A stretch of DNA of 64,000 nucleotides, from the NCBI GenBank assembly GCA_001179505.1, contig CDMY01000405.1:186001-250000 (forward strand), written 5' to 3'. Below, in pieces: positions 50 through 54,100 of the stretch (position 1 is its first letter; every line of letters starts with the position of its first letter). Below the pieces are notes generated by a model, which searched no databases, was not told the origin of the DNA, and saw only the letters and a list, made by a program, of their open reading frames with translations. The position numbers and the translations under genes were made by a program. The stretch is from Vitrella brassicaformis CCMP3155. Taxonomy: Eukaryota > Protista > Chromerida.

Positions 50-349
50 NNNNNNNNNNNNNNNNNNNNNNNNNNNNNNNNNNNNNNNNNNNNNNNNNNN
101 NNNNNNNNNNNNNNNNNNNNNNNNNNNNNNNNNNNNNNNNNNNNNNNNNNNNNNNNNNNNNNNNNNNNNNNNNNNNNNNNNNNNNNNNNNNNNNNNNNNN
201 NNNNNNNNNNNNNNNNNNNNNNNNNNNNNNNNNNNNNNNNNNNNNNNNNNNNNNNNNNNNNNNNNNNNNNNNNNNNNNNNNNNNNNNNNNNNNNNNNNNN
301 NNNNNNNNNNNNNNNNNNNNNNNNNNNNNNNNNNNNNNNNNNNNNNNNN
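50..349. other. Assembly gap (300 N)
   Basis: Run of exactly 300 N flanked by G-rich tracts. Confidence 0.99.
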
Positions 350-399: not shown

Positions 400-1598
400 T
401 TCAGTTAGTCAGCATGTGTGTGTGTGTGTGTGTGTTGCAAAACACCAGCATGACATCAAGTGGGTGAGTTGATGCAAAAAAGAGCGAGAAGGGAGGCTTG
501 CTATGCTAAGCTATGCTGCGCTTGGTTGCCTTGCTTGCCTTGCCTTGCCTGCCAGTCGCCACACGTGCACGCCGCACTACCATTCATTCATTCATCCATC
601 CATCCATGAGTCGGCGGTGTGTGTCTGTAGTACGTCACATCCATAATGCTGCGGCCATCCTCGCTACCCAATCGGCGGGAACCGAGGGGTGCCGTCGCAC
701 GATGAAGTTGAGGCACGTCAGGACACACTGCCTGCAGGGGAAACGAAGCCAGTGGTATGCATTATCGGCCAAGTAGGCAGGTAGGTAGGTAGTAGGCAGT
801 GATGGTGGACTGTGTTCTCGGCACAGGTAGACAGGCAGGCAGGTGGATAGGATGGGTAGCTAGTTGGGTAGCTAGTTGGTTGTACGAAGGAAGGAACTAT
901 GGGTAGACGTCGGTAGACGTCGGGCGAGCGATGCATACCATACACACAGACAAACATACATACATACGATAGAAAGACAAACAGACAGACAGACAGACGG
1001 CCTTTCCCTCGTTGACATCCATCCAATCCATCCATCCATCCATCCATCCGCCTGCCCTTCTGCCTGTCTGCCTGCGTGGCTCGCTGCGATGGGTATACAC
1101 TTGAGGAGTCGACCAGTCGGTATATATAGAGTATAGCGTGCATACCATACCTGCGATGGATGATACACAACCAATACATGACATACATACGTACGATCGA
1201 TCGATCAATCAATACACATTCACACACACACACATAGACAGACAGACAGACAGATACCCACCGATATATGCAAGTATGTATGTATGTCGCTGTCGCGCGC
1301 TACCTAAATGGGAAAGACTTCACGCACGCACAGACGGACGGATGCCTCTCTCCCTGCCTTCCTGCCGGTGCCAGTTGGTGTGCTGCGTCTGCCTGGTTGG
1401 TTGTTGAATGCCTCTGTACAAAAATCGACCTAAAGCACGTCCGTCACGTTGAGAGAAGGATGAAGCCAGGCAGGTAGGCAAACAGACAGAGGGGCAGGCA
1501 AGTTGGTGATTGGATTGTCTTGAGGGTAGACGTCCCCGCGCGCGCAGTGAGAGAGTCACATTATGCATCTAGATCGCAAAAACATACATAGTCAGACA

Positions 1599-1631
<33 letters not shown>

Positions 1632-2030
1632 GGCGCCAGACAGGCAGGCAAGCAGGCTGGGCAGACAGGCTCCCTCCACTCGTTCCATTCCATCCATCCA
1701 GTCTCTTGTTTCTCTCCTTAATTGGGCCATACATACAAAACAGACGTGCACACACTCCCACACCGATACACACGTACGCACACGGCCTTGTGTGTGGGTG
1801 TGGTCGTGTGTGCGGCATCCAGCCAGCCAGCCAGCCAGCCATCCTTCCATCCCCACACATACAGCTATGGGCTAAAGACATCCAAGCAGCCAAGCAGTGA
1901 GCTAGTTAGTGGCAGCCAGGCAGCCAGGCAGGCAGACAGGCAGACAGGGAGGGCGGGCGGGCTAGGGGCGGGGTAGGGTGATGGAATGGATGGATGGATG
2001 GAGAGAGCCTATCTCCCTCTCTCTCCTCTC
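400..2030. repeat. Microsatellite-rich non-coding region ((GT)n, (CA)n, (GA)n, (CAGA)n, (CCAT)n, (CAGC)n)
   Basis: Dense simple repeats, e.g. cacacaca-gagagaga at about 1596-1631. ORFs here translate to repeat-derived low-complexity peptides. Confidence 0.8.
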
Positions 2031-2041
2031 CGGCCATCTCT

Positions 2042-3871
2042 CTATCTGTCGCTCGGAGTGCGCTTTGGCTCGTTGGTCTGCCGGCCCTCCATCGCCCACC
2101 TGGCACACACACAAACACACACACGCAAACCAACCAGCCAGCTATGTCTGTCTCTCCACGGTGCCTCATGTAATGTTGGTGATCCATCCCTCCCTCCCTC
2201 CCTACCTGAGTATTTTCATGCAGGTGAAGAACCGCTCCTGGTCTGCGGGGTCCCGGAGGCACAGCAGCATGTACATCGGCCTGTCGTCATGGGTGTACTG
2301 GTACCAGCACACAATCACCACACGCAGAAAGAGAGAGAGAGAGACGTGCTGCTCGGCTTGCCTTTGGCGATCTATCTGTGTGTGTCCGTATCGCTGAGCG
2401 GCTGAGCGGCTGAGTGGGTGAGTGGCTGACCTGTATGCAGATGAGCCTGGCGAGGTCGTTGGAGGACATGGCAGTGGTGGGGTCGGGCAGCGACATCAGC
2501 GGCGGCATCTTCTTGTAATGGCGGTGGATCTCAACCATCTGATTGATATGCATGACGCGACGCGGGTTTGACGAGGGGTGGGTGGGTTTGCTGCTGTCTT
2601 TTGTGCCCCCTGTGAGTGATCGGACCTTAGTGATTTCGAAAGCGACGAGGGGGTCGGCATCCGCTGGGGCGTCCTTGGTCTGAACTGAGAACAACTGAAT
2701 GAGCCACACACACGCAGGCAGACACAGGCAGGCAGGCGTGTGAGATTGACTGAGATTGGATTGGCGTGTGATGGGTGGGAGTGGAGTGGAGTGCTCACTC
2801 TGAGTGCCCTGTCGATGGTGTATGTGGCGGGCTTGAGCTTCAGCGTGTGGTTGTCCACATACTCGCAAGACATACCGCCCATCACACTCTGAAGAAACGA
2901 CACACCGGTGCGGTAGCAATGCAACGCAAGCCACACATTTCGGCCATCACGCACTGCACTCTCTCGCTCTCTCTCTCTCTCTCTGTCTCTCATTGTTGCC
3001 ATATCACTCACCTTTGCGAATTCCTTGACCATTTCCTGCAGTTTTTCCTTCTCCCTCTGCTTGGCCTCCGCAGTCAGCTTCGCCCTATCCACCACCTTGG
3101 CGTCACCATTCGTACCACCAGCCATGCCACCGCTCCGAGCAGCAGCCGCACCCCCGCCCACCGACGCCCCGATGCCGCTCACAGCCGCCCCTCCGTCACT
3201 CACCCCCGGCTCCGGCCCGTGTGTGGAGGCGGGTTTGTGAACCTGGGGCATCTGTGTCTGTGGGAGGGCGGCAGTGTTGATGGCGTATGGTGGTGCGCCT
3301 GTGGGGACGCCCCTGTCTGACGGGGGAGGGCTGCCTAGGAGGGGGATGCGGGTGTCTGGCGGGGGCTGGTGCTGCGAGTTGAGGTCCTGCAGATTGGCGG
3401 TGTTGGGGACGTTGACGTTGTTGCTGTTGAGGGCATTGTTGGCTGTGGTGGTGTCCTTGTACTGAGAAAGCTTGGTGTCCGCACCCACTGCTATCTGATC
3501 GACGGACGGACGGAGGGAGGGAGGCCACGCCACACACAGACACAGAGAAGGAAAGAGAGAATAGAATGACCAACCAGGTCATTCATCATTTGCATGCAAT
3601 CTCACAGGCAGGCAGGCCTCTCTGCACTGATATGGCCACCCTCCCTCCCTCCCTCCCTCCCTCACTCCCTCCCTCACTCCCTGTCCCTCGGTCTGTCTGT
3701 CTTTCTGCAGTGCACTGTCTGCACTGCAGTGCACTGCCCGCACCCACCCACCTGTTCCCTGCCTCCCTCGTGTATCTTGGGGTCTTCGACGCCCGTGACG
3801 ATTTGCGTACTGGCCTCATCCCGCATAAACTCAGCGCAGCACGACGACTCGCAGCACAGAAAGGGCCACAT
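2042..3871 (-). CDS. IMC sub-compartment protein (ISP)-like PH-fold protein with N-terminal Cys pairs, 7 exons
   Basis: Hand-spliced exons 3871-3752, 3494-3012, 2888-2799, 2694-2626, 2538-2431, 2297-2206 and 2099-2042, all GT-AG and frame-consistent. Protein: MWPFLCCESSCCAEF..., Pro/Gly linker, then EKEKLQEMVKEFAKSVMGGMSCEYVDNHTLKLKPATYTIDRALRLFSV...ERFFTCMKILRWA. This resembles the ISP-C/PH-like domain family of alveolates (recognised from memory). Confidence 0.7.
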
Positions 3872-4300
3872 GGCGTCCAAGGCGCACACCCGTCGACAGA
3901 GGGTGTTGAACAGTCCGGGCTGGTCCTCTTCGTCGGTGGGACGAGCCGCCAACCGCTGGTGGCGATGCCGACCCGCCAGCCTGACTCCGGTGGTCCTCGC
4001 ACACTATAAACAAACCCCACTGAGCTGAGTCGACGCCTCACTTACACAAAGAAACTCTCCTTGCTCGCGCCGCTTCCTGTCCAGAGGGCTCTGCAGTGAG
4101 CTTCCCCACGCAGCGCAGGTCTTTCCACCTTCCCTCTCCTTCCCTTGGCGCGTCGAGCGTCTGCGAGCTCGCTAACGGCGCGATCCTTCCCCGAGGCGTG
4201 TTCTGAGGCAGCTAAGGCCAGAGTAGATGCGATGAGATGAACTGACGTGGGGTTTTGATCGAATCAACGTTCCCCAAAGATTTTGGAGTGGAGCGGCGTG

Positions 4301-7300
4301 ATGACCGGCATCGATAGAGACGAAGAGCCTCCAGAGAGCGAGAGCAACATCCCCACAGCAGCGTGCAACGCCGAGGAGGCGCTGCGGCAGTCGGCCTTCG
4401 CGCAGATCTCATCTCTGTCGGTCTATGCCCGGCTGCAGCGGACGAGCGGCGCCATCGACGACGCCACCTGGCAGCGGTTTGCACACCAGCTCGACGACCT
4501 GCGCAGGGACATGCTGCTGATGCATGGCCATGATGACAATGCCCAGAATGATGGTGACAACGACAATGGCGCCACGATGGTGGACAACGGCGTGTCGACG
4601 TCGATCTGTGAGCCGATGCCCGAGCCGTATGGGAGCCAGCAGCTGCCCACGCGCCGCGTGGTGAAGCTGCCGTCGAACAAGACGGCCCTGGGGATGGGCA
4701 TGATAAGCACCCAGACGGACCTGCACTCGGTGGAGTCGTCGCGAGTGGAGGTCGGGTGGGTGCAGTGGCTGATGATGATGTTCCTGCACCCCAAGCACTT
4801 CGAGAACCTCACTCCGGCTCTCGAAGATGTACGTGGACGAGAGGGGACAGGGGAGGGGCCATGTGGATGGATGGATCGATGGACAACAAGCAAGGTGTGT
4901 TGTCCTTCGTTGCGTGTGTGTGTGTGTGTGCAGGTGGTTGACTTCATGGTGCACGGGACCCCGCTTGAGACGTGGTGGGTGCGTATTGCGGGGCTCAGCT
5001 TCTACCCTCACGACAGCAGGCTCGTCCGGCAGATATGGCCCATCATGATCCACCTCATCCTTTGGTGAGTGAGCAACGACCGACGTGTCGCACGTGTGGT
5101 GGGTGTCCATTGGCCATTGATTGACGCCTGTCACGCCATGCCGTGTCTTGTGTGACAGGCACGGCGCGATATGCAACGGTGTGGTCTTCTTCTTCTCGGC
5201 AATCGACCCCATGTGGTGCGACCGGAACTACGACTCGGACCTGTGTGAGGGGACCGACCTGCTCCTGCTCTTCATGTTCTGGTCCATCAGCCTCGCCGTC
5301 GCCGTGGCCTACACCGTGCTGCGCGTGCAATGGGTGGGTGGGTGAGGCAGTGCAGTCAGTCGGGGATCTGATCAGGCAGCTCAGCTTGCAAATGAGCAGC
5401 ACAGCACATCCGAGAGTGTGTGTATTCCATTGTGTGTGTGTGTGTGTGTTCAGATATACCGTGGGGACGCCTTCCTGCACGCGTTGGATTTTGTGCGGAG
5501 CGAGTGCAACGAGGCGAATGTGCTGCACCGCCTCAAGAAGGATGTGAGGGCCAAGTTCGCCTGGACGGTCGTCTTCACCTTCCTCTTCTGGAGCTACTTC
5601 TTCTACATCGTGAGAGAGGCGCACAGCACACGCGACACACATCTGATCTGCACAGACGAGACGAGCATGCCGCCCGCCGCATATAAGCTGTGTCCACGTG
5701 GTGTGTGTGTGTGTGTGTGTTAGGGCGTGATTGATCGTGCCTTGGTGTTGTCCGACCGGCACAAGAAGTACTTTGCCATCTTCCCCGGGATGCACAACGC
5801 GCCCCAGTGGCTGTTAGAGCTCAACGGCTACCTCCTCGAAATATGCGGCACCCTCTTCGAGCCATTCATTGGCATGGTGAGCCTCCCCCCCCCCCACACA
5901 CACACACCCCTCTGTGTCCATCTTTTGACGACTGATCGGTTCAGACCGTGGCGGCTCAGACGGGGATTATCTGCGTGATCCACCGATCGTCGTTCAACGT
6001 TTTGATGTACCACATGATGAAGCGGGACAGGCACATGCAGATGCACGCCCGCGCGCAGGAGTACAGCAGCAGGCCGCCCATGGCCATGGCGCTGACGGTC
6101 CCGCAGCTGATCGAGATGCACCGGTCGCTCGACGGCATGCTCAACCGCAGCAGCCTGATCTTGCAGGCGCCCATCACGGCCATGGGGGCCCTGTACTTCG
6201 TGTCCTTCCTCAGCTGTCTCTTCCTGATACTGTTCCGTGAGCCGAGCTCCAACGGGCTGGATGTTTTCTTCATTGTGGTGAGTTCAGTTCAGTCAGCTCC
6301 CTCATGAGACACACACACACACATACATGGATGAGATGAGTCTGTCGGTCGACTCATCGGTGTGTGTGTGTGTGTTGATGTGTTCTTCAGTTGGGGATAT
6401 TTTTCACCGTGGGGCTTTCCACGTACTGGATACTGTCAGACACGGCCAAGGTGACGGCCAAGTGTGCACGGCTCGCTGAGATCGCCTCGTTTGCATCACG
6501 GTATGCAGCACACCACACCACAGCACAGCACAGCAAACAAATGAATGAGCCAGAGAGAAACAAAGACCACCATGCCCCATTTCTCTCTCTCTGTCCGTGT
6601 CTGTGTCTCTGTCTGTCGGTCTCTGTCTGTGCAGGCACTACTATCTGTGCGGCGGCACTGAGAACCGCCCCTCCCTCCCCACGCCCGCCTCCTCCCACGC
6701 CCCCACACACGCCATCGTCAGGGACCTCACTCTCTCCAAAGCCGTGGCCGACTCCATCATGCTCGCAGCAGCCACCCCACGCTCATCAGAGGCACCCAGC
6801 AGGCAGGCCACCGCCGACCTGAGCATCACTTTCCCCACCAACGGCTCGACCGTGGCCGCGCCCGAGCACTCCCGCACCAACATAAAGCGGTCCTTCTTCG
6901 TCTTGCGGCCGTCGGTCGCGCGGTTGATGCGGGCGTGGAGGCGACTGCGTAAGGTCAAGAGTGCAGAGCCCAGGAAGATCGAGATCCAGTCGCGCAGCAG
7001 GAGGGCGGGGGAGGAGGATCTGGAGTCCGGGGTGCTGGGTGACATCCCCGTGAGGGACGACAGCTGCGCGCTGTCGTACACGGCCTTTGTGCGGGAGAGC
7101 GATGCGGGCCTGGGGGGCGTGTGTGACGGGATGGGGATGGGCGGGGGCGGAGGGGTGTATAATGTTGGGCGGCCTGGGGTCAAGCCCGCGAGTAGTGGGT
7201 GTGACATAATGCATGAGGCCATGGAGCAGCTCCTGCTCGTCCAGTACTTCCGCGCCTCAAGTAAGAGAGAGCACATGAGAGAGCACACAGACTGACAACA

Positions 7301-7509
7301 CAGCACAGCCCCAAGGAAGCAAAAACGACATTCCCTCCCACTCCCACTCCCCCGCCCCTCTGTGTGTGTGTGTCTGAATCATCCGAATGTTGTCAGATTC
7401 TGCGTGGCGAGTCTACGGTGTGGAGATGACATCCAGTCTGCTGGGGAGGATTCTGTACACGGTCGCCGCGCTTGTTGCAGTGGGGCTGCAGAGGGCGCTG
7501 TCTCTCTAA
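4301..7509 (+). CDS. Seven-TM gustatory-receptor-like (GRL/7TMIC) membrane protein, 9 exons
   Basis: Exons 4301-4828, 4934-5064, 5159-5333, 5454-5609, 5724-5876, 5945-6277, 6391-6500, 6635-7260 and 7397-7509 splice in frame. No signal peptide, a long soluble N-terminus, seven hydrophobic segments, long loops at TM4-5 and TM6-7. C-terminus QLLLVQYFRASNSAWRVYGVEMTSSLLGRILYTVAALVAVGLQ resembles the TM7a/7b pattern of GR/OR/GRL/DUF3537 proteins. Confidence 0.7.
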
Positions 7510-8741
7510 ACAAGGAGAGGGGGGGGGACAAAGGGACAAACTGACTGGGGTAGTGGAGAGGGGAGAGGGGAGCGAGGAGAGAGATGATCAGTCACTTTGT
7601 CATTTTTGTCTCTTCTTGTTGCTCGTGGGCCTCTGTGTGGGGCGTGAGTGTGTGTGGTGCGTGTGTCGACATCTCATATGAGTGAGTGAACCGAGCGAAC
7701 GATTGATTGGTTCAAAGCGTGTGTGTGTCGTAGTGAGAGTGCGTGCGTGTGCGTGTGTGTATGTGAGGTTTTGTGGCTCGCGTGTGCGCGCGTAGGGTAC
7801 ACAGAGAGATTATTTCTTTGTGGTGGTTTATCCGGGGATATCTGCGGTGTGTGGTGTGGTGTGGTGTGGTGTTCCGTTTGTTGTCTCTCTTTGTTAGGTA
7901 GGGCTGTTGGCTGCTGAGTCATCGCTATTTCTTTGGCCGGGTGGCGGGCGGGCGGGCGGGCGGGCTTTGTACCTCCTGTGCAAAGATGGAGGGATGGCTC
8001 CATGGCTGACTGCACCACTGCAGCCAAGCCAGATAAATGGCAAGATGAGATGGATGGATGGATGGATGGACGGACGCATTTGAGCGGTCCGTCCGTCCCT
8101 TCGTACGACGATGGATGTGATGTGTGTGTGACGACTAGTCCATGTGGTGCATGATTCATGTCTGTGTGCCGTGCGTAGCACAAAGCATGTGACTGACATA
8201 CAGGTCTGTCTGTCTGTCTCTCTGTGAGTGAGTGCGTTCGTTCATTCGTGAGTATGTGCGTGTGTGCGTGTGTGAGTGGGTGTGGGGCATTTAATTTTAT
8301 TGAGGAGTGAGTGAGTAATGCGCGATGCGCATGTGGGGACGGACTTATGTAGCTGACCGTACTTGATGCAGTGCTCTCTCTGTCCTTGGTGTGTGACGAT
8401 ATTCTGATGGATGGATGGATGGTTGGACAATCTCTCTCGTGTCTGCCAGACAGACAGACAGCCCTATCGGCGGGTGGCAAGTTGACTGACTGATTGCTTC
8501 ACTTGAAAGAGGGCGCCGCCCATGATATATACGACAGATGGGAAAGAAGAGCTTCATACGCTCCGCCGGTCGGTGCACACACGTGTCTGTCTGCAACGCA
8601 GCCACACACCCACTCGCACACCAGTCCACTCCTACCCATCCCCTCTCCTCTCCCCTCTCCTCTCCTACACACACACCCCTGCCCCCTGCCAATCAAGCCG
8701 TCAACGCAACGGCCACTCATCCACCGATCCCTGTGTCGTGT

Positions 8742-10138: not shown

Positions 10139-10438
10139 NNNNNNNNNNNNNNNNNNNNNNNNNNNNNNNNNNNNNNNNNNNNNNNNNNNNNNNNNNNNNN
10201 NNNNNNNNNNNNNNNNNNNNNNNNNNNNNNNNNNNNNNNNNNNNNNNNNNNNNNNNNNNNNNNNNNNNNNNNNNNNNNNNNNNNNNNNNNNNNNNNNNNN
10301 NNNNNNNNNNNNNNNNNNNNNNNNNNNNNNNNNNNNNNNNNNNNNNNNNNNNNNNNNNNNNNNNNNNNNNNNNNNNNNNNNNNNNNNNNNNNNNNNNNNN
10401 NNNNNNNNNNNNNNNNNNNNNNNNNNNNNNNNNNNNNN
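10139..10438. other. Assembly gap (300 N)
   Basis: Exactly 300 N. Unlike the other gaps it is not flanked by a G/C homopolymer. Confidence 0.99.
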
Positions 10439-33645: not shown

Positions 33646-36511
33646 TCAGTGACCCCCCCTTCCCCCTCTCCAGGCACCAGCCCTCCTACTGCTGGCCGTG
33701 CTATAGTGTCTGTCGCCCACAAGCCGCCTCTCGATGGCTGCAGCGGAGGCTCTCCGTTGCCCCAAACCACCGCTGGCAGCTGCCATGGCGGCTTGCAGCC
33801 TCCTGGTGCTGCCACCGTTGTTCTCGAGGACCACCGGCTCCCCTGAGTGATACATAGACAGACAGACAGACAGACAGCCAGACATCCAGCGAAATGCATG
33901 CGCCCCCCCCCCCCCCCCNNNNNNNNNNNNNNNNNNNNNNNNNNNNNNNNNNNNNNNNNNNNNNNNNNNNNNNNNNNNNNNNNNNNNNNNNNNNNNNNNN
34001 NNNNNNNNNNNNNNNNNNNNNNNNNNNNNNNNNNNNNNNNNNNNNNNNNNNNNNNNNNNNNNNNNNNNNNNNNNNNNNNNNNNNNNNNNNNNNNNNNNNN
34101 NNNNNNNNNNNNNNNNNNNNNNNNNNNNNNNNNNNNNNNNNNNNNNNNNNNNNNNNNNNNNNNNNNNNNNNNNNNNNNNNNNNNNNNNNNNNNNNNNNNN
34201 NNNNNNNNNNNNNNNNNNCCCGACCCACCGACCCACCTGCTGCCTCATACGCCTTTCTCCATCCGTCGGTCCCCGCCTCGCCATGGCACCTGACGGCAGC
34301 GGCCTTAATCGTCGTGTGGCAGCTGGTCACCTCCTCGCCAGACGGATACAGAGACGACACCAGGGCGTTGCTGGGGTGGCTGCGGTCGCTGCACTCCGCA
34401 AGGGACTCCTCGCTGCCGTCACAGTCGGGGATAGAGAAGATGGAGAGTCCCAGTGACGGCTCGCGGTAGGCCGTGACTTGGGACCTGTTGGCTACCTCAT
34501 AGCCGAGGTGCCGGCAGACCACCTGGGCCTCGCGGAGGGTGAAGCGGTGGTCACTGGGGAGAGAAAAGAAAAAAAGAGAATACAACAAGGAGGGAGGAGG
34601 GCGATGGATGGCGGGCTGTAAACGCAGCAGTGGCATGTGTGTGTGTGTGTGTGTATGTGTCTCCCTGGCTGCAGGCACTGCACTGCACTCACCCGCATAC
34701 GATGCCCCACTTGCCATCTCGATAGATTACAACTCGCCCCTCGTCCATCCCGCCCCTTCCCAGATCCAGCCGCACCTCGCCCTCGACTGACACACACACA
34801 CACACACACACAGAGACACACGCACGTACATCAGGAGCATCTGCCTCTTTCTTTTCTCACCTGGCTCCGGCGCACACTGTGGCGCGTACGAGAAGTTGCC
34901 GTTGGCCTGGCACACACGGACAGCTGGTGGTGGCGGCCATGGCAGCAGGGGCGCGGAGCAGGCCTCGTCGTACAAAAGCTGTGTGTCAACAGGGTATGAC
35001 GTGTTGCCGTGTTGGCACACACACGGCTGGCAGGAGCCGCCGCAATCGCTGTTTTGCTCGTCTCCGTTCATCAGACCATCACTGCACGAAACTGAGAACA
35101 GAAAGGCACAGCAGACAGAGACGGAGAAATGTGTGTATTGCTTGGCTGGCCGGCAACAGATCCCGGTCGGGGTCACTTACCGTTAGTGTCGAATGCTACC
35201 GGTGGCGACGTGAGCCTGCTGATAGTCTGCAGCAGGTGCTGCTTCCACGCGAACAGGTGCTCAAGCCGCTCCCAGCGCCGTCGCCTCTCCTCAGCAGATA
35301 TGGACTCAATCTCCTCCTCGTCTCGCACCGACCAGTCCCACCCCAATCCCACCACCCAGCCCTCCCCTCTCCTCACGGCATACGACGCAGAATGCCCATC
35401 GCACTCATACAGTGACAGTGAGTCATCGGGCAGACTCGACGAGAGCACCGTCGACGTGACAGGCCGGTTGAGGAGCGCCTCAGGCGATTGTGCGAAGCGG
35501 GAATTGTTCCTGGCGGCCTCGGTGAAGTTAAATATGTCGCAGTAGATAAGGGCGATGGAGTTGTCGGACTTGGAGGTGATTGTCCAGTTGAAGACGGTGT
35601 TGGGGACGGTGTGCATGTCGCTCTGCAGTATCAGAACACCACCGCTCTCGACGAAGGACCGAATGGCCGCTCTATCGTCGCTGCCGAGAGCCTTGGCCAA
35701 GGCGCCGACTGAGCGGGGAGTGGGCTGGCGGAAAACACACAACATGAAAGATGGCGTGTGGAGGGCTGTGGCTTCCCCGGTGTGTGTGTGCAATGGGCCT
35801 ACCAGGGCAAGGAAGGATGTGCCTTTTAGCGCCTTCGGCATGCCGTTTTCGCGGAAGTTGTACAGCAGGGTCAGCGACTCCTGCAGCGCCTCCTTCAGTT
35901 CCTCTCGCAGGCTGCCACCCGACCCATCACCCTCAACGAGGTCCCTATCGAAAAGGAGCGTCCCGTGTGTCTCCTGGCCCAGCAGCTGCGGCGCGCCAAC
36001 AAGCTCGGCCTTGCTGCGTCCCACGCTGCCCCTCAGCGCACCGCCCCTCACGCTGCTCCACGCCCCCTCCTCGACCCCCGCGGCAGGCAGCAGCTCGGTC
36101 CGCAAAGCCGAGGTGTCCGACGCCTCGCACCGCACCCACAGGTCCTTCGGCTGCCCACCGCAGTCGACCACGTCGCTGCCTTCCACGCCATACCTCTCGA
36201 GGCTCCCGCACTCGAGCAGGTTCTGTTCGTGGCCCTTGCAGCGGAGGTGGTGCAGCCAGATGATGGCTGGGGGCGTGTCGGGGAGGGATTTGTGTGGCTT
36301 GGTGAGGATGTGCATGGCCTTGCCTGCACCGAGCTGGCGGCAGATGACGTCGGCGTCGAAGAAGGAGAACTCGACGGGGCAGATGGTGCCCCATGAGCCT
36401 CTGCCATAAAACTCCACTCTGCCACTCGCCTGGTCGCTGCCGTCAACAAGCCGCACATCGCCCACATCTGCAGAAGGAGAGACGAGACGGAGATGAGGCA
36501 GTCCGTCGATG

Positions 36512-36545
<34 letters not shown>

Positions 36546-39500
36546 GTTTTGCTGCCCACCGCACCCGGCTCTTTGATGCACTGAAATGTCGTTGGGTCCT
36601 CGTAGAACCCGTCAGGACAGACGCAAATGGCCATGACAGCCCCAAGACGATTCTCACAACTGGCCATTTCGTCACAGACGCCAGGGAGAGCGCACTCGTC
36701 GATGTCCACACAAACGCCGTCCTCCGCGTACTCACTGCCAGGGAAGCAGAGGCACTCGCCGTATCCCTCGCCGACCTCCGATGCAAGACACACGGGGCAC
36801 TCCTGCGGGCCGTCTTCCGCGTCAGTGGGCGGGGGGCTGTCCGCACAGGGATCGGTGTCGGCGCATGCGATGTTAAGCCAGAAGTAGGACGTGGTTTCAA
36901 GGGCGGAGCTGTTGGTCTGCATCCATATGCCGCTGTGGGGGATGTTGCCGACGGAACGGACAAAGGCAAACACGTCGGGGGCGCTCGGGTCGCTGCCGTT
37001 TACAAAGAGCCTGAAGTGAATGAACCCAACACAACAGGCGATGGTGCAGGCAGGCATGGCCCGCCCCGACAAGTGTCTGTGTCTGTGGCTCCTCAATCTG
37101 CCTGCCTTCTCTCACCATGATTCGTGTCTCGCGACAAACACTAGTGTGGCGTTGTTGCGATGGAAGGTCGGCCACGACTGAGAGACGTCCTCTGCCTTCC
37201 ACATGCCGTTGGCCGCTTCATGTGGCTCGGGAAAGCCATAGATGGAGAGGTACTTGCACACCTCACACGACCCTCTCACCAGCTGCACCTCGTCGATGGC
37301 CACGGGCAGGAACTGCTTGGATCCTACAGATGCCCCATTGCGCGTTGCCTCAAAGGTGATGTTGAAGGCACTAGAAGCGGAGAATCGCGTCATGGCGAGC
37401 TGCCAACTATCGCCATGGTCCAAACCCCCCACCGCCCACAGCTCCCTCGACACCCCGTCTTCAGTCTTGGTCACGGTCAAGCTGCCCACAGCACTGCCGA
37501 ACAGGTGGTAGGCGAACTGCAGGCAATACTTGGTCAGTGGCGATGAGGGGATCTCCGGCGGCGACGTGATACGCGTGGAGCCCTCCATCCCACTACTCCA
37601 TGCCCACAGGTACGATGGCGAAAAGTAGCCGGCGCGCGGCAGGGAGGTGACATCTGTTAGCAGGTCCTGTGGACCGGTCGACCAGGCTTCTGTGTCGCTG
37701 AGGTCGTTCCTGTAGCCGCACATGGCGCCTTCAAACGAGCATGACACTTCCGGACACCCCCCGTCCCATATCATGATGTCGTCCAAAGCCAGCCCGCCCC
37801 CCCGCTCCTTGAGATAGACATGGCCCTCAATGACGACGCGGAAATCCACATCTGAGCTGAAGAACAGCCTGGCAACGTGCCAGGTCCGCCTTCGCTTCTT
37901 CAAATGGGCGCTAGTCCAGCGCGCAATGGTGCGAGAGGTGGCGAGGGAGGTGTAGTTGCCCGTTGACGCCGGGACCACATAGATAGCCAGGCGGTCGGCA
38001 GGAGACGTCGACTCAGGGGCGGTCAACTGGTAATGGACTTGCAAGCAGAACCCCTGCACACCACAAAAGACATCCATGGGGGGGGGGNNNNNNNNNNNNN
38101 NNNNNNNNNNNNNNNNNNNNNNNNNNNNNNNNNNNNNNNNNNNNNNNNNNNNNNNNNNNNNNNNNNNNNNNNNNNNNNNNNNNNNNNNNNNNNNNNNNNN
38201 NNNNNNNNNNNNNNNNNNNNNNNNNNNNNNNNNNNNNNNNNNNNNNNNNNNNNNNNNNNNNNNNNNNNNNNNNNNNNNNNNNNNNNNNNNNNNNNNNNNN
38301 NNNNNNNNNNNNNNNNNNNNNNNNNNNNNNNNNNNNNNNNNNNNNNNNNNNNNNNNNNNNNNNNNNNNNNNNNNNNNNNNNNNNNNNGGGGGGGGGAGGG
38401 AGGGATCCGTGCGATAGGGGGCTCTCTCGCGTGTGTGTACCTTACCTTGTTGTCGTCCGATCCTGAGTGAATAGGCGAGATCAGCCGCCCAAGGCCCTCT
38501 TCCCGCCCGTCGACAACGCCAAAAGGGCCAACATAGAGGAACGCATAGAGCACCCCGGACGAAGACATGGTGTGGTCGCCGGTCAAGGCCTCGCCCCCGT
38601 CTGCCGTGCGCAGCTTGCCGGCCGCCACCTCCAGACTCCAGTCAAGCGTGTCGTTTTCTGAGTCCTGCTCCCAGCCGCAGAACCCATTCTCAAAGTCACA
38701 GGCGATGTCCTCGCTGGTGGGGATGTAGCTCTCACACGTGATGCGCACGTTGGTCAGAGTGCTGTTGAGCCGCTCCCCGCCCGACACGAGCACCCAGTCG
38801 CTGTCGATGGGCGGGAGGGAGAGCATGGGGCTGTCGACGCCGAGCGTCTCGGCAATCACCACGGGCTCGCTGGTGCCTCCTGCCGTGTAGGCAACTTTCC
38901 AGCTGTCCGACAAGGTCGACCAGAAGACGAAGAGAGGGCCGTTGCTGAAGGTGCTCTTGCCGTTCTGGAAGCCAGAGCGGAGCCAAAAGGTGCTGGCCGA
39001 TCGGAGGACGGGGTTGGTGGAATCCTGCAGACGGCCATGGCTTCTCAGGAACGGACAGGGGGCGCACTGGCCGGCCTTGACAGCGATGTCGTCGATAGCA
39101 ATGAAGAGGTCCGTCGGAGCGTCGGGGGCCGCTGGCTCGCCAGTGTGGGACACCCAGAAGCCAATCTAGGGAGACAGGCAGGCAGGCAGGCAGGCAGGCA
39201 CAAGCCACACAAGTATCCACACACGGCACCTGGTGAGCCCTTTGTGCTTGGCTGGCTGACCTGGAATGCCTGATCCATCTCATTCAGCTCCACCTGCACC
39301 TGCCTCCAGCCGTCGGTCTCGCCTCTCGCCGCCTTGACACGCGTCTCATTGCCCGCGGTCTCGTTAGCTCTCAAAATGGAGACCTCCAGGACATACTGCC
39401 TCTGGACGTGTGTCCACACGAAGAACTCCAGGCATCCCTGGCCGATGGGTGGTGAGGGGGGCGAGTAGACGGGGGGGACGGAGAAGGTGGACGCTTTGAG

Positions 39501-51116: not shown

Positions 51117-54100
51117 TTAGGGTGTTCGTGAGCGTGCGACGCGTGTGCTGACTCAGCTGGTAGAGCACTGCCCGGCTCTCCTCCACCCCATCCCATTCGT
51201 CGACACAAACCCACAACAAGACCAGGACGAGTTAGTAGCCATGCCACACAACACAACACAAGACACCCCCCCCCCCCCCCCCCCCCNNNNNNNNNNNNNN
51301 NNNNNNNNNNNNNNNNNNNNNNNNNNNNNNNNNNNNNNNNNNNNNNNNNNNNNNNNNNNNNNNNNNNNNNNNNNNNNNNNNNNNNNNNNNNNNNNNNNNN
51401 NNNNNNNNNNNNNNNNNNNNNNNNNNNNNNNNNNNNNNNNNNNNNNNNNNNNNNNNNNNNNNNNNNNNNNNNNNNNNNNNNNNNNNNNNNNNNNNNNNNN
51501 NNNNNNNNNNNNNNNNNNNNNNNNNNNNNNNNNNNNNNNNNNNNNNNNNNNNNNNNNNNNNNNNNNNNNNNNNNNNNNNNNNNNNNCCCCCGCTCCTTGT
51601 GTGCAGTGAGGATGCGAGTCCCCCCCGCCGCGCCCCTCAGCCGCGTAGCAAGAAGAAGGCCCCCGCCAGGAGGCGCCTGCAGGACAGCAGCAGCAGCAGC
51701 GATGGCGACGACGATGACCTCGATGACCTCGATGACGACATGGATCTCGATGAGGACGAAGTGGGTGGTGGCCGGTCCAAGCACAAGAGCAAGAAGAACG
51801 ACAAGGACAAGAAGAAGCCGTCGGGGCGCCGGAAGAAGCGGCGGGATGGGGGCGATGACGAGGACTATGACGAACAGCTGGTCACAAAGGCACACAGACA
51901 GGCACACTGCCACACAGTGTGGCAGGCTGTTGATCGGATGTTAAGGCGGTCTTTGTGTTTGTTTGTTGGTGCCTTTGCGGGTCAGGACCATGAGGCGCGT
52001 AGGAAGAAGAAGAATCGCAACGCCCCCAAGCAGCAGCAGCAGCCGCGCAAAAAGGACTCTTTCGCAGGTCACATAAGACACACCACACCACAAGCCAACC
52101 CAATCCAAGCCAACACTGCTTTCCTTCTCCTCTCCTCAGATCCCCTGCTGGCCCTGCTGCAGCGGATGTGTCTGGCGGCCCACGAGCGCAGCGACTGGCG
52201 GCAGGGCACCGCCGACTCCGTCACGGCCATCCTCGCAGCCGTCACCACACACCACCTCGCCATCGCCCCTCCACTGCCCCCTCCCCCCGACAACCAGGAC
52301 CAAGAGGCCATGGACATCGACCTGTCCGACGACCTGGTGCGTTCGATGGGCGCGGTGCGGATCGTCAAAGAGATGGCGGGTTTCTTGGTATGCATGCTGA
52401 GTGCGGAGAAGATGTCGTGGCGGGGCGAGGCGCTGGAGGTGGCGCAGCGGTGGCTGATGGCGTCCATGGGGGAAATCAGGGGCATCGAGATGGTGCCGCC
52501 TGACCTGGAGGCCGCCAGGGGGGGCGAGGGGGGAGAGGTGAGCACATGAAGAGGCGGGCAGACGAGGTGGCTGGACCTACCTTTTGTGTGTGGTTTGCGG
52601 GTGCGTTCAGGGTGTTGGTGCTGCCGTGAGTGCAGTGGATCTGCTGTGGCGGGAGCTGTGCAAGCGGGCCAAGGACGCCAATGCACTCAACCGGTACGCA
52701 TGTGTCTGCGCGTAGAGAGAAGAAATAACACACACTCTTCCAACCACCATATTGTCTCGTGTCTCTTCCCCCTCCCTCATCCGGTCTGTCCACCCATCAG
52801 CCGTCGTGCGATCAGTTTAGCGTTAGACTTGTTGCAGGAGCACGCCGCCGACCCGCAGCTGCTCAAGCGGCTCATCGGCAAGAGCACCGACCCCTCGACA
52901 GGCGCCGTGTGGCAGGCCATCGACCTCCGCCGCGTCTTCCAGGACTGCGCGAGGGACGAGAGCAAGGACACCAAGAAGGAGGCGGCCGTCATCATGGAGA
53001 AGATGGGCCCCCTGCTGGTGCGGTCGCTGGGGTCCACTGCTGAGAAGCTGCTGCGCATGTTCGACCCGAGGGTGGTGGAGGACCTCATCATGGACGCCTC
53101 AATCAGCGTCCGCAAACAGGTGGGTGAGTTGAGTTGGGGGTGTGTGGTGGAAGCAAGGCGATGGATGGATGGATGTGTATCGCGTCTGTCTACAGGTGTT
53201 GTCGGCGGTGGATATAGTATACGGTCAGCACGGCACAGCACACACGGGGAGACACAACATGACAAAGACAGGTGCCCACCAATCCACCGTCCGTCTGTGT
53301 GTTCTCCCTTTGTCGCTTCAGAGGTGTGTCCGGGCTCTCCCGAGATCCGTCAGCTGTGGGCCAAGGTGGTCCTGCCATGCGTCGTAGATGTAAGCAACCA
53401 GCACAAACACACCACCCGCACATATCGTCCCACCATCTCTTCTCTCTCTGTCTCTCTCTGCTCTTGCTTTTGCTTTCTCGCAGCCTGAGGGCACTGTGGA
53501 CGCCAAGGCGTTAGAGCTGGTGGAGCGCCGCATCGTCGACGAGCTCGCCGCCCTGCCCACCTACTTCGACCCCTCGTGCGACGTCGTCTACAAGGCCCGC
53601 AAGAAGAGCAGACTCAAAGACATCAACCTGCCTGAGGGCGATGGTGCTGGTGGTGGTAATGGTGGTGGCGACGGGGGAGATGGGGACGGCGATGTGGTGG
53701 CCCACCCGCGTCCGCAGGTGCTGGATCTGTTGGACTCGCTGGACGGTGAGGGTTTGGAGTACATGCAGCGGGGCGTGCGGAAGCTGCGGAAGGTCAAGGG
53801 TGTGATCCCGCTGACGTGGTACGCCACCCTGCACGGCATCATGAAGGCCTGCCTCAACGCCAGAGTGCCGGTGGAGGACTGGCCGCTGGGCGTCTGGTGC
53901 ATCTACGAGGCAAGCTTACAGCCATACCATACACACACATCTCCCCAATACATACCCACACCAACCGTGTCCTGCCCGTGTGTGCGCTCAGGAGATGACC
54001 GGTCTGAAGAAGGACGGCCTACAAACCGAGTTGATAGTGCGGTCGTGGCACGCCGCCGCCCCGGCCAAGGACATCCTCACCCTCTCGCCCCCGCCCAGCC

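What the first reader, a model, noticed from the sequence alone, without database searches (positions are those of the whole stretch)
4301..7509. Insect odorant/gustatory-receptor-like 7TM ion channel candidate in a protist
Seen: nine exons give a protein with no signal peptide, a long soluble N-terminus, seven hydrophobic segments, and a final hairpin-like TM7 (AWRVYGVEMTSSLLGRILYTVAALVAVGLQ) preceded by QLLLVQYF. Known: this inverted topology and split TM7a/7b define the tetrameric ligand-gated 7TMIC superfamily (insect ORs/GRs, GRLs, plant DUF3537), and GRL-type proteins have been reported in chromerids, so this locus may already be catalogued. Inferred: a chemosensory or ligand-gated cation channel in a unicellular alga, with ligand and role unknown.
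Basis: partly seen in the sequence, partly recalled or inferred. Interest (0 to 1): 0.8.

Follow-up and report, generated by a model that had tools for sequence, protein, structure and literature searches.

The report
Known Vitrella gustatory-receptor-like protein VbraGRL5
This nine-exon gene of the alga Vitrella brassicaformis is real and transcribed, but it is VbraGRL5, a distant relative of insect smell and taste receptor channels that was published in 2020 and structurally compared in 2023, so it is not a new finding.

Summary
The nine-exon gene at 4301-7509 (+) is real. All eight GT-AG introns are removed exactly as modelled in intron-less contigs of three public runs. The 774-aa product is letter-for-letter a database protein (P0001).

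My own tests agree with that classification:
- Seven helices, with long, K/R-rich odd-numbered (cytoplasmic) loops.
- A below-threshold Pfam 7tm_7 hit on TM4-TM6 (E 5.8e-4).
- The paralogue VbraGRL3 (BLASTP 6e-45) passes the 7tm_7 threshold.
- The nearest language-model and ESM-structure neighbours are OR, GR and DUF3537 clusters.

Limits and oddities:
- My AlphaFold run used a 3-sequence alignment (pLDDT 36) and could not test the fold.
- The strict TM7 motif is absent.
- The protein is oversized by a ~200-aa N-terminus and a ~180-aa insert between TM6 and TM7a.
- I detected only four paralogues of this clade, all in Vitrella.

Channel function remains inferred. Verdict: already known, low novelty.

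The parts
4195..4300 (+). 5' leader, at least about 100 nt, with three 2-codon uORFs (uATGs at 4227, 4232, 4237)
   Evidence: Spliced contigs begin at 4208 (X1) and 4195 (X7). uORFs.
4301..4828 (+). Exon 1 (aa 1-176): start codon and most of the hydrophilic N-terminal region
   Evidence: Contig blocks in X1, X7 and X8.
4934..5064 (+). Exon 2 (aa 177-220): end of the N-terminal region and start of TM1
   Evidence: The joint 5063/5158 (GT..AG) is seen in X1, X7 and X8.
5159..5333 (+). Exon 3 (aa 220-278): TM1, short acidic loop EL1, TM2
5454..5609 (+). Exon 4 (aa 279-330): loop IL1 and TM3
5724..5876 (+). Exon 5 (aa 331-381): loop EL2 and start of TM4
5945..6277 (+). Exon 6 (aa 382-492): long TM4, loop IL2, TM5, start of TM6. 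This is the best-conserved part and the core of the below-threshold Pfam 7tm_7 match (aa 380-507).
6391..6500 (+). Exon 7 (aa 493-529): TM6 and its cytoplasmic extension (invariant VTAKC.RL.E.AS)
   Evidence: The joint 6499/6634 is seen in X7 and X8.
6635..7260 (+). Exon 8 (aa 529-738): the S/A/R/G/P-rich insert between TM6 and TM7a (aa 535-716), including a basic helix (aa ~615-640, window 6891-6968), then TM7a with QLLLVQYF
7397..7509 (+). Exon 9 (aa 738-774 plus TAA): the invariant 7a-7b linker WRVY and TM7b, the presumed pore helix
   Evidence: The joint 7260/7397 is seen in X1, X7 and X8.

Best explanation
The locus is the transcribed nine-exon gene for VbraGRL5 (GenBank CEM10760.1, UniProt A0A0G4FBY6) of Vitrella brassicaformis. 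It is a divergent, already catalogued member of the seven-transmembrane ion channel (7TMIC) superfamily, which holds insect odorant and gustatory receptors, animal and protist GRLs and plant DUF3537 proteins.

Shown: the gene structure; its transcription and splicing; a 774-aa protein with seven helices; and homology to the VbraGRL3/4 paralogues and, through them and weakly on its own, to Pfam 7tm_7. An N-in/C-out orientation is predicted, not measured.

Inferred by analogy with Orco and the GRs:
- Four subunits assemble around a central pore lined by TM7b.
- The long cytoplasmic extensions of TM4, TM5 and TM6, together with TM7a, form the anchor domain.
- A ligand bound in the extracellular half of the helix bundle opens a cation-permeable gate.
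- The ~200-aa N-terminus and the ~180-aa insert between TM6 and TM7a are cytoplasmic, probably mostly disordered, and may be regulatory.

The ligand and the membrane in which the protein sits are unknown. I put superfamily membership at about 0.85 and actual ligand-gated channel function at about 0.5.
For: Identity: the spliced model equals P0001 exactly. The 774-aa VbraGRL5 sequence in the supplements of PMC7746228 has the same length and reads the same by eye.

Transcription and splicing: intron-less contigs in three runs match the model.

Topology: seven hydrophobic segments. The odd-numbered (cytoplasmic) loops and flanks hold 23 K+R against 6 in the others, and the intracellular loops are the longer ones. 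The published TOPCONS prediction is 7 TM, N-in.

Helix pattern: TM4 (358-421), TM5 (433-477) and TM6 (485-534) are long, and TM7 is split into 717-739 and 750-773 (low confidence).

Homology:
- P0001:360-535 has Pfam 7tm_7 as its best family (E 5.8e-4, 19.7 bits; aa 380-507 against profile positions 165-285).
- The paralogue VbraGRL3 aligns over TM1-TM7 at BLASTP E 6e-45. It passes the 7tm_7 gathering score (29.7-31.9 bits against 26.6).
- The nearest protein-language-model clusters include 'Odorant receptor', DUF3537 and 7tm_7 clusters, at scores 0.90-0.94.
- The best structural neighbour of the ESM Atlas model of this exact protein is a 'Gustatory receptor' cluster, TM 0.53/0.61 over residues 275-532.

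Against: - Whole-protein and exon-by-exon Pfam scans give no 7tm_7, 7tm_6 or DUF3537 hit. The segment hit is below the gathering score.
- The strict TM7 motif (T/S)Yhhhhh(Q/K/E)(F/L/M) is absent. In the register where the paralogues keep T and Q, this protein keeps only Q (ALVAVGLQR).
- At 774 aa the protein is well outside the 350-500 aa typical of the family.
- My own AlphaFold model is unusable (mean pLDDT 36, pTM 0.27). Its Foldseek search of the PDB gave no hit at E <= 0.001, and insect OR/GR chains appear only at E 0.5-1.2.
- The profile search of PDB sequences found nothing relevant.
- I found no electrophysiology or ligand data for this or any other non-animal 7TMIC in the papers I read.
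Confidence: 0.8

Rival explanations
1. The protein is a true 7TMIC homologue but not a chemosensory ligand-gated plasma-membrane channel. It could be an organellar or internally regulated channel, or a membrane scaffold. Its large cytoplasmic N-terminus and TM6-TM7a insert would then provide the control, rather than an external ligand.
For: - About half of the protein is cytoplasmic extension absent from insect receptors.
- The insert holds a basic helix, RLMRAWRRLRKVK, that is conserved in VbraGRL4.
- The TM7 motif residues used for the subunit interface and the gate in Orco are not kept.
- Other superfamily branches such as PHTF have no known channel function (PMC9998090).
Against: - The pattern of helix lengths and the strong conservation of TM5, TM6 and TM7b among the paralogues (70-78% identity to GRL4 against 41% in the insert) are what a conserved pore and anchor would give.
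- Nothing points positively to another activity.
Confidence: 0.3
2. The protein is an unrelated multi-pass membrane protein, for example EI24/CysZ-like or CorA-like, and its resemblance to ORs and GRs is convergent or an artefact of comparing long-helix bundles.
For: - The VbraGRL4 fragment scores slightly better against Pfam EI24 (E 0.0015-0.0021) than against 7tm_7 (E 0.018-0.023).
- The second structural neighbour in the ESM Atlas is a CorA-like cluster, TM 0.43.
- My Foldseek hits are not significant and are mixed with ABC exporters and designed helical bundles.
Against: - P0001 itself gives no EI24 hit.
- VbraGRL3 passes the curated 7tm_7 threshold.
- 7tm_7 is the top family for P0001:360-535, and the match is in the right register, with TM4-TM6 aligned to the profile's TM4-TM6.
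- Language-model neighbours from three separate 7TMIC branches (OR, GR, DUF3537) agree.
Confidence: 0.07
3. The protein is a G-protein-coupled receptor with the classical N-out, C-in topology.
For: Only the count of seven hydrophobic segments.
Against: - There is no signal peptide, and the 205-aa N-terminus is acidic.
- The charge bias places the N-terminus and the odd-numbered loops inside.
- The published TOPCONS prediction is N-in.
- No GPCR family appears in Pfam at E <= 10.
Confidence: 0.02

Closest known systems
VbraGRL5 itself (CEM10760.1 / A0A0G4FBY6), from Benton, Dessimoz & Moi 2020 eLife (PMC7746228) and Benton & Himmel 2023 eLife (PMC9998090)
   Different: Nothing differs. What I add is a check of the gene model against transcript-derived contigs, the paralogue census in the genome, and the lack of relatives outside Vitrella in very large protein libraries.
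VbraGRL4 (CEM01650.1; P0002 is a 449-aa fragment of it) and VbraGRL3 (CEM19221.1 = P0003)
   Same: They share the architecture from TM1 to TM7 and several invariant motifs: YTVLR.QW, LPI..M..LY, VTAKC.RL.E.AS, LVQ(Y/F) and WRVY. Identity is 61% to the GRL4 fragment and 24-32% to GRL3 (BLASTP E 6e-45).
   Different: The N-terminus and the TM6-TM7a insert differ in length and sequence. GRL3 carries an extra insert of ~60 aa in IL2 and passes the Pfam 7tm_7 threshold, which GRL5 does not.
Insect gustatory and odorant receptors (Pfam 7tm_7 PF08395, 7tm_6 PF02949; Orco 6C70, MhOR5 7LIC, Gr43a, Gr64a, BmGr9)
   Same: Seven TM helices with the N-terminus inside, long TM4-TM6 helices, a split TM7, a short TM5-TM6 loop and a weak profile match over TM4-TM6. 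A published match to the Orco fold exists.
   Different: Identity is about 10%, and the TM7 motif is not kept. The protein is about twice as long because of cytoplasmic additions. It comes from a unicellular photosynthetic alveolate. Tetramer formation, ligand and conductance are untested.
Plant DUF3537 proteins (PF12056)
   Same: They belong to the same superfamily according to the literature. A DUF3537 cluster is among the nearest language-model neighbours (score 0.93).
   Different: There is no HMM hit to PF12056, either in the exon translations or in a six-frame search of the whole genome. That search's own controls also rang nowhere, so the negative result is weak.

Membership tests
7TMIC superfamily (OR/GR/GRL/DUF3537) | Seven transmembrane helices | tested here: met
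   Seven Kyte-Doolittle segments. The matching helices appear in the model's secondary structure. The published TOPCONS prediction is 7 TM, although OCTOPUS and SPOCTOPUS miss TM7.
7TMIC superfamily (OR/GR/GRL/DUF3537) | Intracellular N-terminus and extracellular C-terminus, the reverse of GPCRs | tested here: met
   There is no signal peptide. K+R counts are 23 in the N-flank and odd-numbered (cytoplasmic) loops against 6 in the other loops and the tail. Published TOPCONS, Philius, PolyPhobius and SCAMPI predictions are all N-in/C-out. This is prediction only, not experiment.
7TMIC superfamily (OR/GR/GRL/DUF3537) | Intracellular loops longer than extracellular loops | tested here: met
   IL1 is ~36 aa, IL2 ~57 aa and IL3 ~240 aa. 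EL1 is ~13 aa, EL2 ~32 aa and EL3 ~6 aa.
7TMIC superfamily (OR/GR/GRL/DUF3537) | Length of about 350-500 aa (criterion ii of Benton et al. 2020) | tested here: not met
   The protein is 774 aa. The excess is the ~200-aa N-terminus and the ~180-aa insert between TM6 and TM7a. The membrane core alone is about 390 aa.
7TMIC superfamily (OR/GR/GRL/DUF3537) | TM7 motif (T/S)Yhhhhh(Q/K/E)(F/L/M) | tested here: not met
   No strict match exists. In the paralogues' register (TLIAVGLQR, TIFAIAIQR) this protein reads ALVAVGLQR, which keeps 1 of 4 positions. The authors call the motif diagnostic but not definitive.
7TMIC superfamily (OR/GR/GRL/DUF3537) | TM7 split into a cytoplasmic 7a and a membrane-spanning 7b | tested here: inconclusive
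   The model shows helix 717-739, a 10-residue break holding the invariant WRVY, then helix 750-773. The model's pLDDT in this region is below 50.
7TMIC superfamily (OR/GR/GRL/DUF3537) | Profile match to Pfam 7tm_7, 7tm_6 or DUF3537 | tested here: inconclusive
   The whole protein gives no hit. The segment 360-535 scores 19.7 bits against 7tm_7 (E 5.8e-4), below the gathering score of 26.6. The paralogue VbraGRL3 scores 29.7-31.9 bits, above the threshold, and is linked to this protein at BLASTP E 6e-45.
7TMIC superfamily (OR/GR/GRL/DUF3537) | Orco/GR-like tertiary fold | tested here: inconclusive
7TMIC superfamily (OR/GR/GRL/DUF3537) | Tetramer with a central pore lined by TM7b | not tested
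   Four copies, or even two full-length copies, exceed the 1000-residue limit of complex prediction. The shallow alignment would also make any result uninformative.
7TMIC superfamily (OR/GR/GRL/DUF3537) | Ligand-gated cation conductance | not testable with these tools
   This needs heterologous expression and electrophysiology.
Rhodopsin-type and other GPCRs | N-out topology and a match to a GPCR family | tested here: not met
   The predicted topology is N-in. No GPCR family appears in Pfam at E <= 10.
EI24 / CysZ (PF07264) | Profile match above the curated cut-off | tested here: not met
   P0001 gives no hit. Only the GRL4 fragment reaches 18.6-19.1 bits against a cut-off of 32.

The most novel reading that the evidence does not exclude
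VbraGRL3-6, including this gene, may form a clade found only in Vitrella, with no detectable sequence relative among 1.84 billion representative proteins. In this reading the 7TMIC core has gained large cytoplasmic modules: a ~200-aa N-terminus and a ~180-aa TM6-TM7a insert with a conserved basic amphipathic helix. Gating would then be controlled from inside the cell, for example by phosphorylation or by a Ca2+/calmodulin-type partner, rather than, or as well as, by an external chemical. That would be a mode of regulation not described for this superfamily.
Probability: 0.15. Interest if true: 0.45.

Novelty: already known. Interest (0 to 1): 0.2.

Why it matters
7TMICs outside animals are the main evidence that the insect smell and taste receptor fold dates back to early eukaryotes, and the papers I read report no functional characterisation of any of them. 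This locus is one of the published examples, so its discovery value is nil.

The checks here do make it a cleaner target for experiments:
- The annotated gene model is correct and the gene is transcribed.
- The clade has exactly four paralogues in the genome.
- The conserved and variable parts are mapped, which helps in designing constructs, for example by trimming the N-terminus and the TM6-TM7a insert.

Tried and rejected
- Pfam on the nine exon translations gave nothing relevant.
- Six-frame searches of the whole genome with PF12056 and PF08395 gave nothing. The tool's own controls rang nowhere, so these negatives say little.
- The word-index protein search, run with the TM core (residues 195-530) and with the profile A1, returned only the protein itself and the VbraGRL4 fragment. 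It missed VbraGRL3 even though BLASTP gives E 6e-45, so its blank is not evidence of absence.
- PDB sequence searches with the profile A1 and with VbraGRL3 gave only chance hits: a MarR regulator, a heparinase and a flavivirus envelope protein.
- AlphaFold2 on the 3-sequence alignment gave mean pLDDT 36 and pTM 0.27, so the 3D coordinates are unusable. Foldseek against the PDB with that model found no match at E <= 0.001.
- The only extra sequence available, VbraGRL6, would have had to be added as about ten exon fragments and would have raised the depth only from 3 to 4.
- VIA-align searches were not run, because they drop residues with pLDDT below 60, which is nearly the whole model.
- The tetramer prediction was not run because of the size limit and the shallow alignment.
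- The look-up of encoding contigs returned no record for P0001.
- The spliced translation was never typed into or sent to any search tool. It was built only inside the sandbox from window.fa. Full-length searches used P0001, which the database returned for the exon-6 query and which is identical to the model.
- The GPCR, EI24/CysZ and CorA-like readings were considered and rejected, as set out under the rival explanations.
Full report
**Source and gene model**

The window's assembly has 72,700,666 bases in 1064 contigs, and the window is contig C405:186001-250000. The word search names the window's protein as a product of Vitrella brassicaformis CCMP3155.

Reading 3800-8000 and translating in three frames gives nine exons with GT..AG borders: 4301-4828, 4934-5064, 5159-5333, 5454-5609, 5724-5876, 5945-6277, 6391-6500, 6635-7260 and 7397-7509. 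They join into a 2325-nt open frame of 774 codons plus TAA.

**Transcript support**

One run search found eight holders. I laid four of them on 4101-7700.
- Contigs of X1 (1681 nt), X7 (4402 nt) and X8 (4214 nt) lie on the stretch as blocks that match the exons.
- Three introns are reported directly as GT..AG skips: 5063/5158, 6499/6634 and 7260/7397.
- The other five lie next to (GT)n tracts that the tool skips. The contigs' own coordinates are contiguous across them. In X1, for example, record 623 maps to 4830 and record 629 to 4941, which is what the join 4828|4934 gives.
- X6 carries the unspliced or genomic form (4983-6184 is contiguous).

The model therefore holds after transcript-based splicing. 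These are assembled contigs, so expression level and transcript ends cannot be read from them.

**Identity**

The joined translation existed only inside the sandbox.
- Exon 6 (window:5945-6277, 111 aa) searched against 1.84 billion representative proteins returned three hits: P0001 (774 aa, 100%), P0002 (449 aa, 65%) and P0003 (730 aa, 40%).
- P0001 equals my spliced model letter for letter.
- The supplements of Benton, Dessimoz & Moi 2020 (PMC7746228) give a 774-aa sequence of the same length that reads the same by eye, named VbraGRL5, CEM10760.1.
- P0002's C-terminal text matches VbraGRL4 (CEM01650.1, 720 aa), so I read it as a fragment of that protein. P0003 is VbraGRL3 (CEM19221.1).
- The paper lists six Vitrella GRLs.

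**What the literature already says**

Benton et al. 2020 selected these proteins by BLAST, length, seven TM segments, an intracellular N-terminus and long intracellular loops. They supported them with HHblits profile comparisons and noted that the TM7 motif is only partly kept. Their trRosetta alignments for VbraGRL3-6 held 2-3 sequences, and no model or match is listed for them in that supplement (supplementary file 176).

The published TOPCONS prediction for VbraGRL5 is 7 TM, N-in, C-out. OCTOPUS and SPOCTOPUS miss TM7.

**My own tests of the classification**

*Topology.*
- There are seven hydrophobic segments.
- The N-flank and the odd-numbered (cytoplasmic) loops hold 23 K+R, against 6 in the other loops and the tail.
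- The odd-numbered loops are also the long ones, at about 36, 57 and 240 aa against 13, 32 and 6 aa.

*Sequence families.*
- Exon-wise and whole-protein Pfam scans give no OR/GR family.
- The segment 360-535 has 7tm_7 (PF08395) as its best family: E 5.8e-4, 19.7 bits, below the 26.6 cut-off. Residues 380-507 align to profile positions 165-285, which I read as TM4-TM6 on TM4-TM6.
- VbraGRL3 passes the 7tm_7 cut-off at 29.7-31.9 bits, with residues 424-518 on profile positions 211-305.
- VbraGRL3 aligns with VbraGRL5 from TM1 to TM7b at BLASTP E 6e-45. The link to the family is therefore transitive but solid.

*Language-model and structure neighbours.*
- The ESM Atlas holds this exact sequence, with pTM 0.55.
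- The nearest clusters by features include 'Odorant receptor', DUF3537 and several 7tm_7 clusters, at scores 0.90-0.94.
- The nearest cluster by structure is 'Gustatory receptor' (7tm_7/Trehalose_recp), at TM 0.53/0.61 over residues 275-532. A CorA-like cluster follows at TM 0.43.

*My own fold.* AlphaFold2 on the three-sequence alignment A1 gave mean pLDDT 36 and pTM 0.27, so the coordinates cannot be used. Only the helix pattern is informative:
- long helices at 358-421, 433-477 and 485-534;
- then helix 717-739, a 10-residue break, and helix 750-773.

This is the pattern of long TM4-TM6 helices plus a split TM7 seen in Orco. Foldseek against the PDB with this model found nothing at E <= 0.001. 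Insect OR/GR chains (7lic, 8v3c, 8x84, 8v02, 8jme and others) recur among the top 50, but only at E 0.5-1.2. I count this as no support either way.

**Where it departs from typical family members**

- The strict TM7 motif is absent. In the register where GRL4 and GRL3 read TLIAVGLQR and TIFAIAIQR, GRL5 reads ALVAVGLQR.
- The protein is 774 aa long. Residues 1-~203 precede TM1. Residues 535-716 form an S/A/R/G/P-rich insert between TM6 and TM7a, with 60% disorder-promoting residues.
- Conservation follows the expected functional core. Identity to the GRL4 fragment is 78% in TM5, 70% in TM6, 80% in the 7a-7b linker and 72% in TM7b, against 41% in the insert.
- Motifs invariant across GRL3/4/5 include YTVLR.QW, LPI..M..LY, VTAKC.RL.E.AS, LVQ and WRVY.

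**Distribution**

The profile A1 finds four loci in the genome and no more at E <= 0.01: C405 (this gene), C307, C510 and C593. I assign these to GRL4, GRL3 and GRL6 respectively, from tblastn and the published alignment. So I found no uncatalogued paralogue of this clade.

No relative outside Vitrella appeared in the exon-6 search of 1.84 billion representatives or in the word searches. The word searches also missed GRL3, so they are weak evidence. The representative search used a single 111-aa exon and did not list VbraGRL6 among its three hits, so distant relatives could equally escape it.

**Mechanism**

What is shown is a transcribed gene for a seven-helix protein, predicted to be N-in, that is homologous to the GR/OR superfamily.

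What is inferred from Orco and the GR structures, as described in the papers read here, is the following:
- a tetramer whose pore is lined by TM7b;
- an anchor domain built from the cytoplasmic parts of TM4-TM6 and TM7a;
- a ligand pocket in the outer half of each subunit;
- cation flux on opening.

The ligand, the membrane and the role of the two cytoplasmic additions are unknown. I put superfamily membership at about 0.85 and ligand-gated channel function at about 0.5.

**Verdict**

It is VbraGRL5, published in 2020 and structurally assessed in 2023. Novelty: already known. Interest is low for the scan, although the protein remains a worthwhile and uncharacterised experimental target.

Noticed in passing
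window 4914-4929, 5432-5449, 5701-5720, 6360-6375, 7362-7373: Five of the eight introns carry a (GT)6-10 tract in their 3' part, ending 3 to 23 bases before the acceptor AG (three of them within 4 bases). Introns 5 and 6 also hold (CA)n tracts and intron 7 a (CT)n tract. This looks like a regular feature of this genome's short introns (68-136 nt).
   Followed up: partly
window 4227-4245: There are three overlapping two-codon uORFs (MR*, MR*, MN*) in the 5' leader, which the spliced contigs cover.
   Followed up: no
window 6891-6968 (aa ~615-640): A basic amphipathic stretch, SFFVLRPSVARLMRAWRRLRKVK, lies in the otherwise poorly conserved TM6-TM7a insert. It is kept in VbraGRL4 (RLLRVWRRVKK) and predicted to be helical (aa 622-634). 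It could be a binding site for a regulator. That is speculation.
   Followed up: partly
window 50-349, 10139-10438, 33919-34218, 38088-38387, 51287-51586: There are five runs of exactly 300 N (assembly gaps). They explain the low-GC bins in the composition profile.
   Followed up: yes
window 4101-7700, contigs of runs X7 and X8: The spliced contigs run on well past the gene. X7 extends about 1.8 kb beyond 7700 and X8 about 1.7 kb upstream of 4101. Either the UTRs are long or neighbouring transcripts overlap and were assembled together.
   Followed up: no
L007 (G000:C593:37000-43000): The locus I take for VbraGRL6 has more and differently placed introns than this gene, including one inside the TM7b coding part and one between LLLIQYF and WRVYD.
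   Followed up: partly
P0002 (JGI, on a 2072-nt contig): This is a 449-aa open frame matching the C-terminal part of VbraGRL4 (checked on its last ~52 residues). It starts inside TM2 and lies on a short contig. The frame is uninterrupted although the genomic copy on C307 has introns, so the contig is probably transcript-derived.
   Followed up: no
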